A stretch of 63,891 nt of DNA, filler included, from Octopus bimaculoides (lineage: Eukaryota): NCBI RefSeq assembly GCF_001194135.2. It is 7 parts of 7 records of this genome, joined end to end, with 100 filler letters (N's around TTAATTAATTAA, not from the genome) between each part and the next. Parts side by side here need not be neighbours in the genome. Positions count along the whole stretch, not along the records: positions 38,882 to 46,163 come from NC_068986.1; 6 more parts are not named here. The stretch is one strand, 5' to 3'. Below the pieces are notes generated by a model. The model did no database searches. It was not told the origin of the DNA and was given only the letters and a program-made list of their open reading frames with translations. Below, piece by piece: positions 40,271 through 46,263 of this stretch (positions are counted from its first letter, which is position 1; every line of letters starts with the position of its first letter). The translations under genes were made by a program, and so were the position numbers.

Positions 40271-41463
40271 NNNNNNNNNNNNNNNNNNNNNNNNNNNNNN
40301 NNNNNNNNNNNNNNNNNNNNNNNNNNNNNNNNNNNNNNNNNNNNNNNNNNNNNNNNNNNNNNNNNNNNNNNNNNNNNNNNNNNNNNNNNNNNNNNNNNNN
40401 NNNNNNNNNNNNNNNNNNNNNNNNNNNNNNNNNNNNNNNNNNNNNNNNNNNNNNTAAACATAGTAAAATAGACAAAACGAATATTGTGAACTTGGTATGG
40501 GTTGTGGAAAATTCAACGTCTCGAACAGAGTCCTTCTTCGGGGAATTGTTAACAGAAAAGAAAGTAAAATATGAAATGTTTCAGTTGGCGTATTTCGCTG
40601 GCTTGAATAAGAATTCTAATTTTCGCTAGGACGAGTCTGTAAAATCGCCAGAAGATAACCTCTGTAATGGTGAAGCCTATCATTTATGCAGTGCTAATTT
40701 TAAGGGGAAGTACGATATTTTTCCTAATGCGAGTAATGATTTAGTCACAGGAAACAAGATTAGCAGAATCTTATTGAAAATACTTTCGATGTCAGTTCAT
40801 GAAGTTTAACTTTTATATACTTTGGATTCTTAGTTGAAGGTTTAGTTGTCGACCATGAAAGAAATCGATTTTGTTAGATTTTAAAATTTAAAATTTAGGA
40901 AACATCATATTAAAGATTTCTTCTCACCCGACAAAAAAATTCAGATTGTGTCAGATTGTTCTCTGCCGTGTTTGTTTCTATCCTTACTTAATATGTGCGT
41001 AATTTACTTTTTTTTAACCAATCTCAGCCACTTTATTCTCGGAATAAAATAATGTTCTGTTTAATGTCGAGTTTTAGTTAATGTAACTGTAGTACTGTTT
41101 CTATAATCTAACGTGATTTCATGTATTCTATAATAGAAATATATGTCGCAAACTAACGGCGTTCATTTGAGATGATTACTTTTACAGATATACGATAATA
41201 AACAGTAAAGAAGCTGAGAAACATAGATACTAAGTTAGCTACCAGTTAGATATTCAACTTTATGACAAATAGAAACACATAATTACATATAATTACATAT
41301 AACATAATTACATATAACGATAATGTTTGATTTATTAGTGAAATTACTATTTCGGATGTCAGAGTTAGATATAAAGAGATAATAGAATAGCTACAAAATT
41401 TTAGTTGTACCTTGATTCTTTCTATTCGCTTATCTTATGTTTTCTTGTTCTTTTTCTTTTTAG

Positions 41464-41957
41464 GTGTATGCCTTACAATGTTCCTGGTTATCAGTACAGC
41501 CACTGTGTGGATATCAGCTATCCAGCTGCGCATCATGCATTCGAAATCATCATTTCCAAGTAGCTTCAGTAAGTCTGGTCTGAGTACAAGCAGTTTCAAC
41601 GACGAAACCAGTCTAACAGTGCCATTAGACGCAACACTTAGTACTGGAGCCAGTTGCTCAGGGACCGCAGGCACCAGTGCAGACAAGCTCGAGAGCTATG
41701 TCATGGTAGACTACCTTCGGCATCAACAAAGTAGTTCGGGTGAAGAAGGGTGTGCCGGTGGAATTCCCCCTGCTGGTATGGAGAACTTCATTAATGCCAT
41801 TGTATCGCAACGTGAACAGAGGAAATTCCAGCATCGAAGATTAGAAGGGAAACGTCGTAAATTTTTCCTATCCAAAAATCTCGGATGTTGGTTTTCCCTC
41901 ATTGCTACTCTGCTGACTATACTGACGGCACTTGCACCACTTTTTGTCATCACCTAA
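41464..41957 (+). CDS. Terminal coding exon of a divergent nicotinic acetylcholine receptor-like (Cys-loop) subunit: M3, intracellular loop, M4
   Basis: Strong acceptor ttttcttgttctttttctttttag|G with phase-1 junction; 494 nt open to TAA. (G)VCLTMFLVISTATVWISAIQLRIMHS aligns ungapped to alpha7-type M3 [27 protein letters not shown], which also follows a phase-1 intron. The C-terminus KFFLSKNLGCWFSL...LAPLFVIT resembles KFAAMVVDRFCLF...SAPHIIV. AATAAA follows at about 42022 and 42144. Family call is by-eye alignment. Confidence 0.72.
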
Positions 41958-42881
41958 AACAAAATTCATAAGCTTGATGCGCCGACAATGGCGACACAAA
42001 TGTGAAAGAAAAATTAACAGCAATAAACCCATAAACATAAGAGACAATATTGAATACAAAATACTTAACAACAATTCATACAATAAGATAAATTCCATGA
42101 TTTACTTTATAAAACACAATGAAAATAAAACATTTCCGAAGAGAATAAAAACACGATAAACAATGTGGTAAAATATTAAACTGCCTAAACACACAAAGGG
42201 AAAAACTATAATCTGAGAAAGAGACCAAGTTTAAGAATGCCTTCATTGAAATAAACTACTGCTTTTGAAAGGACTGTCGATAAAAAATATTCCCTTTGTA
42301 TGATAAAAACAACAAAGAGAAAAAAACGTGAACAATAGGAATGGAAAGGGGAAATTCATAGAAGGGTTTAGTGTCATAATGTTATACATAGTTTGTCAGA
42401 ATCGGACTCATACCAATTAATGGAACGGTTTACAAGTTGTAAATGTAAAAATTATTTTCTCTTGTTTAATTCCATAATTTCCCAGATTCAAAAATATGAT
42501 ATTCTTCTATGTCTGGTGTAAAATATAATAGAGGTAATTTCGTTTTTGATTTCTATTTACATCTCTCAAATACATTTCCAAACAAAAAACGTGAAAAATA
42601 ATTGACAAATTGATTTTATAAAACAATAGGCATTTATCTTCAACTTGGAAACGGGACGAGTTTAAAGTAAATTAAAGTAAGAACAAATATATACACAAAT
42701 TGATAACGTGCATACATATACTGATGAATATTTATATGTACACGGGAATTTGTGCACATAAATACGTATTTACACATAAAGCAAGCAACCTAAGTAGAGC
42801 ACATAGGGTTTGAGTACTTCAATAAGTTTATTTATGCATGTATGTGTATACATTATATACAAATATACTCATAATTACAAC

Positions 42882-42921
<40 letters not shown>

Positions 42922-42980
42922 CAAATATATGTGTGTATATGCGTGTTTGTTTGTACGTATGTATATATACATACATATAC

Positions 42981-43049
<69 letters not shown>

Positions 43050-44237
43050 TAACCCTCTCATAATCAAGAAAATAGTTGTTCAGAGTTTATCTTGATTAAA
43101 TTCCAGATAAACAGCATAAAGAATGAATTATGGTTGTAGGGCTCAAGAGTGATTACTATATATAAGCGGATTTGTTTATATGGGCGGCTACCACTCTGGG
43201 CGTAAGGTCGCTCTAATGAATAGAGTGTTACTACGGTATTTTCGAGACTACATCTCTGGAACAGAATGTAAAAATCATAACTAAAGTAGATGAATGAAGG
43301 CTATTACTGGGCTGCAGAGTTGATGCGATAGCAAGAATGAGTAATAGCAATGGGAAAAAAATGAAACAGTGCAAGACTATATCACGTATATAAAGCATGG
43401 AAGATATGAATGTGACTAACGAAACTTCGAATTTAATATGTTGTATTGTCAATAAGATGTAAATTGCTGCAGCGAGTCTTAAAATATAGGAAAATAAAGA
43501 CGATATCATAAAACGCTGACCGAGAATAGTCAAGAGAGATTATTGAATCGACACAAAAAGATATTGCGAAGCGGTAGATCAACAATATAATGTCAAATGG
43601 CAAGTAGAAGAAATTCAAAGGGAGTCAGGTCAAAACGCGTGTGTTTCTGATAAGTGTATGAGTTGGAGGTGTGAGGGATACCATGTGAAGAGCAAGGATT
43701 TAAACTTTAGGAAACTAATGCAAAACATCGATATTACGTTGTTTTAAGCTCTACATGTACTTTGACAAAGGAGTAATATTTTGTTTTCACCATGCCTGAA
43801 TAGCAATATATCGTGGAAGTTTCGTTATTGGAATCTGTCTTCTACATTTACCATGCATTTGTTTACGCACTAGCAATTGGTTAAATCTGATAGAAATAAC
43901 AATAATTTCGTATATTATCGATCCTGTATTGCATTAACAGTAAAGAGGAATTGTAGCTTGCTGCGTGAGTTTTAGAAATTTATTTCCAATGAGTCTGTCA
44001 TTTCGAAAAACATCAATCTGCATAAATTATTCACAAAATATCAGTTAGTAGTTTGACTGGCTCGAAATATAATCAAGTATCAAGCTCACTTGTATTATGT
44101 TCTGAAGTGGATCAGCATTATGTCTCCAAATTTCAAGTTTATCAGCATGACTGATGCGTACGCCTTTTTATTGCAAACTCTTTTACACACACACACATAT
44201 ATACAAACACACACACATATATACAAACACACACACA

Positions 44238-44287
<50 letters not shown>

Positions 44288-46263
44288 CTAGAAAATAATA
44301 TTTTGATTGAAGCATATAGCTTTCTCTTTTGTTGTTATAGCCGTGAATAATTTCATTAGATATTTTAATCCTGTTTTTTAATCGCATTTTGTAAATTATG
44401 TTTATGTCTCATGAACACACGAACATTTTCTCACCCGCATACAAGTAAACTGTGAGTATGTATGTGTGTAAGTTTCATTTACGCTTTTTCGTATTTCATA
44501 ATAAGCCGCGAGTAAAACATTAATGAAATCGGCCTGATTAATTTCCTGGCCGAATCTTTACCATTCACCCATCAATTTTCGACTCCATCTTCAGAAACTG
44601 ATATATGCAACTGAGTACATTATTAAACTCCACTATGCGAAACCATTTGTATTTCTAACAATGCAGGTCAGCTTTAGATGACGATATTGCCATATTGGAG
44701 CATCTTTCAAATTCTTGCCTATAAGTGTTGGAATTTTCTTTTCTTCATCACGTTATTGTTTATATAATTTCTTTATAACAATGGATAATGAATTTGCTTA
44801 CGATTATATACTAAGATTATGAATATTCTACTAGACTCTTAAATTAAACAAAGCAAGATTTTCTTATCGGTATTTAGTCTTGAAATGAATATTCACTTAG
44901 AAGTATTTTTACAGTCTTCAAATAATTTTCTGTCAAACACTATCGATTTTACGTAGAATGGCTAAATAAAGATTTATAAAAATAAAAAGCGTATGGAGAT
45001 CCGTAGCGATTACTCTCTGTTACATAATGCAATAAAAATGCCGTGATCTATATTATAGCAATGATATCTCCAAACAGTCAAATAGATTTCATGACTTTCA
45101 GAGTGATACAATGCAGTTTTAAAATGTTCCCAAATTATATTGAATACAACTACTTTATCGTTTATTACAACATTACGTTGTGTCATGCCCACTTTCCAAG
45201 ATGATTCGTGTTACAAAAGCTGTTCACCGACCGCTTCTTTCTTCATTTCCCTTACTAAGTGTTGGTGCTTTTACAATCTATTTTATATGGAACATACGTA
45301 TAAATAAACTAAAATATTTTACGCAGAGAAAGAATGATTGTATAGTATTCGCAAAATTTCATTATCAAGTAGTTAATATAAGAAATTATTACCATGTCTC
45401 AATCATTGTGCTAATTTATATGGTGTATTTAAATATAATTTCGTGGTGATTAATATTACGCTATGGAATCAATAGAAAAGCTATTATTTCGTATATATGG
45501 TAAAGAAATTAAATAATTCTTTTTCCCTTATTTTGGGAAGCTCTGTAATTGGTATTTCTTAGGAGAGCAATAACATAATTATGAACAAATTATCGATAAC
45601 GTTCTTTAGTTACTGAGTATCGATCCACTGGAAAGTGAAATGCTATTTTATGTTTAATTCGATGTTTTACAGTAAAATTGCATATTCAGTTATTCCACAA
45701 AAATTTGGGGAAGCCGATAAAATGTACCACTTATTTGTACAGGTATCTGTCAAACTACATTTGAAATTTGTACTGATTATCATGATAGTTATTTTGTACA
45801 ACAGATGGTGAATAGAATATCTTGGAGGCATTCAATACGTCAAATTTACACCTCACTCTAATGCATATTTTATGGATTATAACCTTCTTTATAGTCACGT
45901 ATGAAAAATACGTTACAGCGCATGAAGAGCAGTACATAATAGTTACTGTTATATAATAATTATTGTTAGCACCAAGGCATTTATAAGGATTCCGAAATAT
46001 CATATCAGACTATGGATGACTAAATTACAACAGGTATAAAGTCCATTGTTTGTATTATAGTGCATTGTTGTACCATTCAAAATTTTTATTCTTTGCAAAC
46101 AATACACAATGCTTCAAGCGAAGTACAATACTCTCCTATATATATATATATATATATATATATNNNNNNNNNNNNNNNNNNNNNNNNNNNNNNNNNNNNN
46201 NNNNNNNTTAATTAATTAANNNNNNNNNNNNNNNNNNNNNNNNNNNNNNNNNNNNNNNNNNNN

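What the first reader, a model, noticed from the sequence alone, without database searches (positions are those of the whole stretch)
41464..41957. Divergent nAChR-like channel subunit with non-canonical M4 entry
M3 keeps the alpha7-type phase-1 intron and the V..T/S...L...H pattern, but the pre-M4 W-K..A.V.DR motif is replaced by RRKFFLSKNL. The about 110-aa loop is Ser/Gly-rich with a very basic MA-like stretch (QREQRKFQHRRLEGKRRK), which could alter conductance or ion selectivity. M3 to stop is a single exon. Octopods have an expanded set of atypical nAChR-derived receptors, including chemotactile receptors. This may be an uncharacterised branch; the long loop argues against a classic chemotactile receptor.
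Basis: partly seen in the sequence, partly recalled or inferred. Interest (0 to 1): 0.7.

Follow-up and report, generated by a model that had tools for sequence, protein, structure and literature searches.

The report
Last exon of octopus nicotinic-type receptor

Summary
A polypyrimidine tract and AG acceptor at 41462-41463 open a phase-1 exon, 41464-41957. It encodes a hydrophobic helix (M3), a loop of about 110 aa that is Ser/Gly-rich and ends in a polybasic helix, a final hydrophobic helix (M4) and a TAA stop.

On its own the exon hits no Pfam family and no PDB chain. Its 163 residues are 100% identical to the C-terminus of RefSeq XP_036360202.1, "neuronal acetylcholine receptor subunit beta-3 isoform X2" of Octopus sinensis. 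That full-length protein carries Neur_chan_LBD (2e-55) and Neur_chan_memb (37.4 bits, cutoff 28.1).

Cuttlefish transcripts (Sepia esculenta) and a second cephalopod genomic contig share the exon at about 85% amino-acid identity. Differences by codon position are 17/13/103, so it is real, expressed and under strong purifying selection.

The protein keeps the Cys-loop, the GEK cation motif and the 9' Leu, but lacks the loop-C vicinal cysteines, so it is a non-alpha subunit. M4 and the stretch before it match no model. The gene has introns, spans about 357 kb and has one-to-one orthologues, so it is not a classic chemotactile receptor.

The gene is already annotated but appears functionally uncharacterised, so interest is modest.

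The parts
41441..41463 (+). Polypyrimidine tract and AG splice acceptor (AG at 41462-41463) of the last intron
   Evidence: Sequence read. The AG and the pyrimidine tract are conserved in L001. Similarity to the cuttlefish-type cDNA and protein starts here (P0002 aa 303 = window 41463).
41464..41954 (+). Coding part of the terminal exon (phase 1: 41464-41465 complete a Gly codon; 163 full codons from 41466)
   Evidence: 100% identical to the C-terminus of XP_036360202.1 and other Octopus isoforms. Codon-position differences 17/13/103 against L001.
41466..41540 (+). M3 transmembrane helix, VCLTMFLVISTATVWISAIQLRIMH
   Evidence: Hydropathy. It lies inside the PF02932 alignment of the full-length protein and aligns without gaps to nAChR alpha1/alpha6 M3.
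41541..41777 (+). Ser/Gly-rich part of the M3-M4 intracellular loop, including the invariant blocks SLTVPLDATL and SADKLESYVMVDYLRHQQ
   Evidence: Composition, conservation across five sequences. No match to any Pfam family or PDB chain.
41778..41876 (+). Polybasic MA-like helix before M4, MENFINAIVSQREQRKFQHRRLEGKRRKFFLSK (10 K/R, 3 D/E)
   Evidence: Nearly invariant between octopus and cuttlefish. A low-confidence AF2 model predicts it as one continuous helix with M4, residues 423-480.
41877..41954 (+). M4 transmembrane helix, NLGCWFSLIATLLTILTALAPLFVIT, ending 0-1 residue before the stop
   Evidence: Hydropathy, conservation. Not aligned by PF02932, TIGR00860 or PDB chains.
41955..41957 (+). 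TAA stop codon
   Evidence: In L001 the stop comes one codon later (FVITY*).
41958..42027 (+). Start of the 3' UTR, with the first AATAAA at 42022 (candidate poly(A) signal only)
   Evidence: Motif positions. No conservation with L001 beyond the stop. The true poly(A) site was not determined.

Best explanation
**Shown.** Window 41464-41957 is the last coding exon of an Octopus gene for a subunit of a pentameric ligand-gated ion channel of the nicotinic-receptor family. RefSeq calls it 'neuronal acetylcholine receptor subunit beta-3' (isoforms X1-X5 in O. sinensis). The exon supplies the third membrane helix (M3), the whole intracellular loop with a polybasic helix that runs into M4, M4 itself and the stop. 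The rest of the protein (signal peptide, ligand-binding domain with a C-x13-C Cys-loop, M1, M2) is encoded by exons outside this piece, in a gene of about 357 kb.

**Inferred.**

- The subunit is a non-alpha type. It lacks the loop-C vicinal cysteines and two of the principal-face aromatic residues.
- It most likely contributes to a cation-selective pentamer, because it keeps GEK with Glu at -1', Leu at 9' and Val at 13'.
- It is most probably an accessory or complementary partner of alpha-type subunits (my estimate about 0.5), rather than a homomeric receptor for another ligand (about 0.3).
- The conserved polybasic helix would lie in the cytoplasmic vestibule and at the inner membrane surface. 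There it could lower cation conductance, as the MA arginines of 5-HT3A do, or bind acidic lipids or assembly factors.
For: - **Identity.** The exon translation is identical to the C-terminal 163 aa of XP_036360202.1 and of isoforms in O. bimaculoides and O. vulgaris.
- **Family.** PF02931 scores 2e-55 and PF02932 37.4 bits (cutoff 28.1) on the octopus protein. The best PDB matches are nAChR alpha1, alpha6, Alvinella AChR, alpha7, beta subunits and 5-HT3A, at E 1e-49 to 1e-38.
- **Real and expressed.** Uninterrupted transcripts of 2.5-2.75 kb occur in at least 13 RNA-seq runs. Two of those runs are Sepia esculenta larvae.
- **Selection.** Codon differences 17/13/103 and dN 0.10.
- **Non-alpha status and pore motifs.** Read from the HMMER alignment to human alpha1 and from the sequences. 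Y93 is replaced by D, W149 is kept, Y151 by E, Y190 by I, C192/C193 by K/G and Y198 is kept. M2 reads GEK-LMLATTTLLAYAVLLNDINRK, with 20' Arg where alpha1 has Glu.
- **GEK as the cation signature.** PMC13174522.
- **Helix.** A continuous helix from MENF to the C-terminus in the AF2 model (low confidence).
Against: - No functional data exist for this gene in anything I could read. Courtney et al. expressed 41 octopus Cys-loop channels, but their held supplements list only the named hits, so I cannot tell whether this gene was tried.
- The AF2 model is poor (pLDDT 48.6).
- The basic residues are spread around the helix (wheel resultant 0.23) rather than forming one clean stripe.
- Arg at 20', Met at 2', Asn at 16' and Asp at 17' are unusual for nAChR pores. 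Conductance and selectivity therefore cannot be read from GEK alone.
- The acidic substitutions in loops A and B could mean a ligand other than acetylcholine.
- No proper phylogeny was built.
Confidence: 0.85

Rival explanations
1. It is an orphan receptor: a homomeric or heteromeric channel gated by something other than acetylcholine, as the octopus dopamine-gated DopC1 and the chemotactile receptors are. On this reading it is not an accessory nicotinic subunit.
For: Three of the five canonical principal-face positions are replaced: Y93 by D, Y190 by I and the vicinal Cys pair by K/G. Yet the extracellular domain is almost invariant from octopus to cuttlefish, so the pocket or interface is under constraint. 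Octopus nAChR-like genes with non-ACh ligands are documented. Outside the coleoid orthologue group the nearest relatives found are only 28-30% identical.
Against: Non-alpha subunits of ordinary heteromeric nAChRs show the same losses. The best PDB matches are ordinary nAChR subunits, with no alpha9/alpha10 (the vertebrate relatives of DopC) or chemotactile-receptor chain among the best 60. No ligand data exist.
Confidence: 0.3
2. It is a member of the cephalopod chemotactile receptor (CR) family.
For: Like the CRs, it is a cephalopod nAChR-derived subunit without the acetylcholine-binding vicinal cysteines.
Against: CRs are described as intronless retrogenes, expanded in octopus (26 against 6 in squid), with pockets under diversifying selection. 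This gene has at least this intron plus a microexon and spans about 357 kb. It has single, strongly conserved orthologues in Octopus, Argonauta and Sepia and evolves under purifying selection. No CR chain is among its best 60 PDB matches.
Confidence: 0.03
3. It is an anion-selective, inhibitory acetylcholine-receptor subunit of the molluscan AChRB type.
For: The polybasic cytoplasmic helix and Arg at 20' would favour anions near the pore mouths.
Against: The M1-M2 motif is GEK, not the PAR-type motif reported for anion-selective molluscan clades.
Confidence: 0.04
4. It is a chance open frame, a dead exon or pseudogene, or part of a membrane protein outside the Cys-loop family.
For: The exon alone matches no Pfam family and no PDB chain, even at E of 10 or below.
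Against: It is identical to the RefSeq protein tail and spliced into full-length Cys-loop transcripts in cuttlefish. It shows a purifying-selection signature. The chance expectation for such a frame is about 0.002.
Confidence: 0.01

Closest known systems
RefSeq gene model 'neuronal acetylcholine receptor subunit beta-3' of Octopus sinensis (XP_029637862.2 X1, XP_036360202.1 X2, and X3-X5), with orthologous models in O. bimaculoides (XP_052824798-800), O. vulgaris (CAI9723745.1, partial) and Argonauta hians (GAB1608589.1)
   Same: The window exon translates to exactly the last 163 residues of these proteins. It is the same gene.
   Different: Nothing differs in sequence. The name is an automatic best-hit label and changes between isoforms of the one gene (beta-3, alpha-5, alpha-6, eat-2), so it does not indicate orthology to vertebrate beta-3.
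Vertebrate and invertebrate nicotinic acetylcholine receptor subunits (muscle alpha1/beta1, neuronal alpha6, alpha7, beta2/beta4; Alvinella AChR 8bx5)
   Same: The ligand-binding domain fold signature, the Cys-loop C-x13-C with FPFD, GSWT in loop B, M1-M3, GEK, 9' Leu and 13' Val. The alignment through the M2-M3 linker and M3 has no gaps.
   Different: It has no vicinal Cys pair. Y93 is replaced by D and Y190 by I. The M2-M3 linker lacks the conserved Pro (SVLG where alpha1 has VPLIG). 20' is Arg rather than Glu. The W-x7-D-R entry to M4 is absent and M4 is not alignable. The intracellular loop has no detectable relative outside coleoids.
5-HT3A receptor MA helix (arginines 432/436/440 that limit single-channel conductance; Kelley et al. 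2003, cited from my own knowledge)
   Same: A basic, helical segment directly before and continuous with M4. R12, K16 and R20 of the segment sit at i, i+4, i+8 spacing, about 16 residues before M4.
   Different: There are many more basic residues (11 including His), spread around the helix. There is no sequence similarity and no electrophysiology.
Cephalopod chemotactile receptors (CRT1 and relatives)
   Same: Cephalopod nAChR-derived subunits that have lost acetylcholine-binding residues.
   Different: CRs are intronless, expanded and fast-evolving. This gene is intron-rich, single-copy and slowly evolving.

Membership tests
Cys-loop (pentameric) ligand-gated ion channel superfamily | Neurotransmitter-gated channel ligand-binding domain (PF02931) | tested here: met
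   2e-55, residues 46-253 of XP_036360202.1, whose tail is identical to the window exon. This domain is encoded outside the window piece.
Cys-loop (pentameric) ligand-gated ion channel superfamily | Transmembrane region (PF02932) above the gathering score | tested here: met
   37.4 bits against a cutoff of 28.1, residues 261-345, including the exon's first 27 residues. The exon alone gives no hit. Isoform X1 with the microexon falls to 23.6 bits.
Cys-loop (pentameric) ligand-gated ion channel superfamily | Two cysteines 13 residues apart in the extracellular domain (the Cys-loop) | tested here: met
   C-RLNITSFPFDRQT-C read in P0004, with both Cys invariant in alignment A2.
Cys-loop (pentameric) ligand-gated ion channel superfamily | Four membrane helices, with the long loop between M3 and M4 and a short extracellular C-terminus | tested here: met
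   M1-M3 by Pfam and PDB alignment. M4 only by hydropathy and position and a low-confidence model.
Nicotinic receptor alpha subunits | Vicinal Cys-Cys in loop C (alpha1 C192/C193) | tested here: not met
   Aligned to K-G in the cuttlefish-type protein. There is no CC in the octopus loop C...NHQSRESEKTYSNAVF....
Cation-selective nicotinic-type channels | GEK motif (Glu at -1') before M2, and 9' Leu | tested here: met
   ...VMSGEKLMLATTTLLAYAV..., aligned to alpha1 SGEKMTLSISVLLSLTV. Selectivity itself was not measured.
Canonical nAChR/5-HT3 M4 entry | W-x7-D-[RK] motif before M4, with M4 alignable to the family profile | tested here: not met
   The sequence is KRRKFFLSKNLGCWF. PF02932 aligns only profile positions 1-86 of 233, TIGR00860 only 26-335 of 462, and PDB matches stop at residue 329 or earlier. 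The wording of the motif is from my own knowledge.
Chemotactile receptors (CRs) | Intronless gene structure (retroposed origin) | tested here: not met
   There is an intron directly before 41464. The gene range is about 357 kb, with an alternative microexon.
Chemotactile receptors (CRs) | Lineage-specific expansion with diversifying selection on the pocket | tested here: not met
   One orthologue each in Octopus, Argonauta and the cuttlefish lineage, at 83-95% identity. dN is 0.10 with dS saturated on the exon.
alpha7-type nAChR gene structure | Phase-1 intron at the start of M3 (CHRNA7 intron 8, inside the codon of Ala in VPLI-A-QYF) | not tested
   Phase 1 and the position in the Gly codon of SVL-G-VCL are shown here. 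The Gly aligns with the G of alpha1 VPLIGKY. The match to CHRNA7 rests on exon sizes and protein sequence recalled from memory. The alpha7 intron after M3 is absent here.

The most novel reading that the evidence does not exclude
The orthologue group is a coleoid-specific, very slowly evolving orphan channel subunit. Several of its features are all invariant from octopus to cuttlefish:

- an unusual pore (Met 2', Asn 16', Asp 17', Arg 20');
- an M2-M3 gating linker without the conserved proline;
- a conserved 8-residue alternative microexon (DWSFWTSQ) in that linker;
- a polybasic MA-M4 helix.

Together these might give a channel with gating, conductance or a ligand unlike any characterised nicotinic receptor.
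Probability: 0.25. Interest if true: 0.5.

Novelty: already known. Interest (0 to 1): 0.22.

Why it matters
For the genome scan this is a correct call on a gene that public annotation already holds, so it adds no new gene.

Its remaining value is as a pointer. Cephalopods have repeatedly re-purposed nicotinic-type channels, as chemotactile receptors, dopamine-gated DopC1 and anionic AChRB1. This subunit is a conserved, expressed and apparently untested member. It has an atypical pore mouth, an atypical intracellular helix and a conserved splice cassette in the gating linker. Those features make it a reasonable candidate for the kind of oocyte screen already run on other octopus channels.

Tried and rejected
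- **Exon alone against Pfam (E up to 10) and PDB (phmmer and a five-sequence profile).** This gave nothing, apart from a meaningless eL41 match.
- **First word-indexed protein search with the exon.** It returned only an ENA gene call, P0001, and not the identical RefSeq proteins. Absence in that tool is therefore not evidence. The exhaustive representative search gave the full-length relative.
- **Upstream exons inside the piece.** I searched three + frames against Pfam, ran tblastn of the full-length protein against the piece and L001, and ran regex and peptide searches for the DWSFWTSQ microexon. None was found. The 184-N gap at 40271-40454 cannot be checked.
- **AF2 on a six-sequence alignment.** pLDDT was 48.6, too poor for fold search, so I used only its secondary structure and ran no fold search.
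- **Checking whether Courtney et al. tested this gene.** Accessions and peptide strings are not in the held supplements, which list only the named receptors and HCR probes.
- **van Giesen 2020 (PMC7605239).** Not held.
- **Other features in the piece.** Rfam and tRNA scans were empty. Other ORFs gave only sub-threshold Pfam noise.
- **An unfiltered blastn.** It was flooded by microsatellite hits. Only its first line was informative.

Full report
**1. What is in the sequence**

A pyrimidine-rich tract at 41441-41461 ends in AG at 41462-41463, followed by GTGTATGCC.... The reading frame is open from 41391 and closes at TAA 41955-41957. With the acceptor at 41463/41464, the first two exon bases finish a Gly codon, so the intron is phase 1, and 163 full codons follow.

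The product has three parts:

- A 25-residue hydrophobic segment, VCLTMFLVISTATVWISAIQLRIMH.
- A 112-residue loop. In the 110 residues counted there are 20 Ser and 10 Gly. It ends in MENFINAIVSQREQRKFQHRRLEGKRRKFFLSK, which has 10 K/R and 3 D/E.
- A final hydrophobic segment, NLGCWFSLIATLLTILTALAPLFVIT, running to the stop.

The exon is 46% GC in a 30% GC background. A frame this long is expected about 0.002 times by chance in the piece.

**2. Is it a real exon?**

The only hit of the first protein search was an ENA gene call, P0001, on a 17-kb contig, L001. At DNA level the window and L001 share nothing but microsatellites and one block, window 41441-41956 = L001 1880-2395 at 73% identity. 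The AG acceptor is conserved.

Over 163 aligned codons the differences fall 17/13/103 by codon position. There are 88 synonymous against 24 non-synonymous codon changes, with dN 0.10 and dS saturated. That is strong purifying selection across a deep divergence.

In L001 the stop comes one codon later (FVITY*). The longer tail of P0001 is an artefact of a gene caller reading TGA as Trp.

**3. What gene?**

On its own the exon matches no Pfam family and no PDB chain, even at E of 10 or below.

The exhaustive HMMER search of 1.84 billion representatives gave one hit: P0002, 468 aa, E 9e-82, with the exon matching its residues 304-467. P0002 carries Neur_chan_LBD (1.5e-55) and Neur_chan_memb (31.4 bits, cutoff 28.1). 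It sits on a 2,496-nt contig with an uninterrupted ORF, so it is a transcript.

Transcript and protein become colinear with both genomes exactly at the acceptor. No other part of the protein is found in the piece or in L001.

Searching with P0002 recovered NCBI proteins named 'neuronal acetylcholine receptor subunit beta-3 isoform X2' from Octopus sinensis (P0004 = XP_036360202.1) and Argonauta hians. The last 163 residues of P0004 are identical to the window exon. The O. bimaculoides isoforms and an O. vulgaris partial model have the same tail.

On the octopus protein itself PF02931 scores 2e-55. PF02932 scores 37.4 bits over residues 261-345, which includes the exon's M3.

**4. Relatives and expression**

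The P0003/P0019 cluster (94% identical to P0002, 85% to octopus) is assembled from at least 11 RNA-seq runs. Two of these runs are cited in papers on Sepia esculenta larvae.

The orthologue group therefore spans octopods (Octopus, Argonauta) and decapodiforms (Sepia) at 83-95% identity. Outside it, the nearest proteins the word-indexed search found are scallop and abalone 'alpha-3-like' proteins, 28-30% identical and lacking the loop. That search scores only 8,000 candidates, so it does not prove that closer relatives are absent.

The representative search with the exon found no other cluster at E of 0.001 or below. The loop and M4 are thus specific to this group, as far as sequence search can see.

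**5. Anatomy of the subunit**

These features are read from the HMMER alignment to human alpha1 and from the sequences.

- *Kept:* the Cys-loop C-x13-C with FPFD; GSWT with Trp149; Tyr198; GEK with Glu at -1'; Leu 9'; Val 13'.
- *Lost in the binding site:* Tyr93 is replaced by Asp, Tyr151 by Glu, Tyr190 by Ile, and Cys192/Cys193 by Lys/Gly. It is therefore a non-alpha subunit.
- *Lost in the linker:* the linker proline, with SVLG where alpha1 has VPLIG.
- *Unusual pore positions:* Met 2', Asn 16', Asp 17', and Arg 20' where alpha1 has Glu.

M4 and the residues before it are never aligned by PF02932 (profile positions 1-86 of 233), by TIGR00860 (26-335 of 462) or by any PDB chain.

The whole loop is strikingly conserved, including the Ser-rich part. 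SLTVPLDATL, SADKLESYVMVDYLRHQQ and MENFINAIVSQREQRKF are invariant in five sequences.

An AF2 model from six sequences is poor (pLDDT 48.6), but it predicts one helix from MENF to the C-terminus. That matches the MA-M4 arrangement of nAChR and 5-HT3 receptors. The basic residues are spread around that helix (resultant 0.23), although R12, K16 and R20 are spaced i, i+4, i+8.

**6. How it most likely works**

*Shown:* the exon provides M3, the intracellular domain and M4 of a nicotinic-family subunit.

*Inferred:*

- GEK and 9' Leu point to a cation channel. The meaning of the motif is taken from PMC13174522.
- The lost principal-face residues point to a complementary or accessory role in heteromers (about 0.5), or to a non-ACh ligand (about 0.3).
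- The basic helix would lie at the cytoplasmic portals and the inner membrane leaflet. By analogy with the 5-HT3A MA arginines (my own knowledge), it could depress cation conductance, or it could act in lipid or partner binding.

None of this was measured.

**7. Not a chemotactile receptor**

CRs number 26 in O. bimaculoides against 6 in squid, with diversifying selection on the pocket (PMC11526382). They are described as intronless retrogenes (PMC13174522).

This gene differs on each count. It has introns and spans about 357 kb. It has single conserved orthologues. No CR chain is among its best 60 PDB matches.

It is not an AChRB type, because it has GEK rather than PAR. It also shows no special similarity to alpha9/alpha10, the vertebrate relatives of DopC1.

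**8. The intron**

Phase and position (inside the Gly codon of SVL-G-VCL) are shown here. That Gly aligns with the G of alpha1 VPLIGKY.

From memory, the CHRNA7 exon sizes (140, 45, 110, 80, 168, 195, 87, 110) place its intron 8 in phase 1 inside the Ala codon of VPLI-A-QYF. That is the same column of the alignment. The alpha7 intron after M3 is absent here.

**9. Verdict**

The gene is already annotated in RefSeq for several cephalopods, so the finding is not new as a gene. I found no functional work on it. Interest is modest.

Noticed in passing
Junction at window 41463/41464. The cassette itself is not in the piece (seen in P0011, P0012, P0015, P0013, P0022, P0024).: An 8-residue cassette, DWSFWTSQ (a 24-nt microexon), is alternatively inserted exactly at the junction before this exon (...TTSVL|DWSFWTSQ|GVCLTMF...). 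It lies in the M2-M3 gating linker. It is present in some RefSeq isoforms of three Octopus species and, with identical sequence, in some Sepia-type transcripts. The alternative splicing is therefore conserved across coleoids. Including it lowers the PF02932 score from 37.4 to 23.6 bits.
   Followed up: partly
Outside the piece (RefSeq isoform X5, P0009, 343 aa): One predicted isoform ends after the microexon with DLDNGNLKIFKPSEMFIL. It lacks M3, the loop and M4, so it would skip the window exon altogether. I did not check whether it is a real truncated product or an annotation artefact.
   Followed up: no
Whole gene, O. sinensis assembly GCA_006345805.1: The gene range is about 357 kb for a protein of about 480 aa. 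This explains why no upstream exon lies within 2.6 kb of the terminal exon.
   Followed up: partly
Protein names in cluster 1: Isoforms of this one gene are named beta-3, alpha-5, alpha-6 and eat-2 in RefSeq. The names are automatic best-hit labels and should not be read as orthology.
   Followed up: yes
L001:1971-2477 (ENA ERZ21867824 contig ctg55245l): A cephalopod genomic contig sits in an assembly filed as a metagenome. Its gene call, P0001, starts at an internal Met of the exon and reads through two TGA codons as Trp, so the called protein is an artefact of a prokaryotic or alternative-code gene caller.
   Followed up: yes
The word-indexed protein search with the exon did not return the RefSeq proteins whose tail is 100% identical to the query. 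They appeared only when a relative was used as the query. A negative result from that tool is not evidence of absence.
   Followed up: partly
window 38906-39015, 40205-40251, 42885-43051, 44185-44287, 46137-46163: Microsatellites: (ATA)14, (GATA)13, (AC)23, (AT)83, (AC)26 next to (AT)25, and (TA)13 at the piece's end. They cause floods of spurious blastn hits to L001.
   Followed up: yes
window 40271-40454: A run of 184 N (an assembly gap) directly after an (AC)n repeat, about 1 kb upstream of the exon. Anything inside it, such as the microexon, cannot be tested.
   Followed up: no
window 43132-43881: A stretch with a marked excess of G over C (GC skew +0.22 to +0.29) and slightly higher GC than its surroundings. 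A 102-aa ORF on the minus strand (43234-43539) gives only sub-threshold Pfam noise, and the stretch is not conserved in L001. It may be a repeat or transposon remnant.
   Followed up: partly
M2 of the full-length protein (outside the piece): The pore-lining positions are unusual for a nicotinic subunit but invariant from octopus to cuttlefish. They are Met 2', Asn 16', Asp 17' and Arg 20', where alpha1 has Thr, Leu, Val and Glu.
   Followed up: partly
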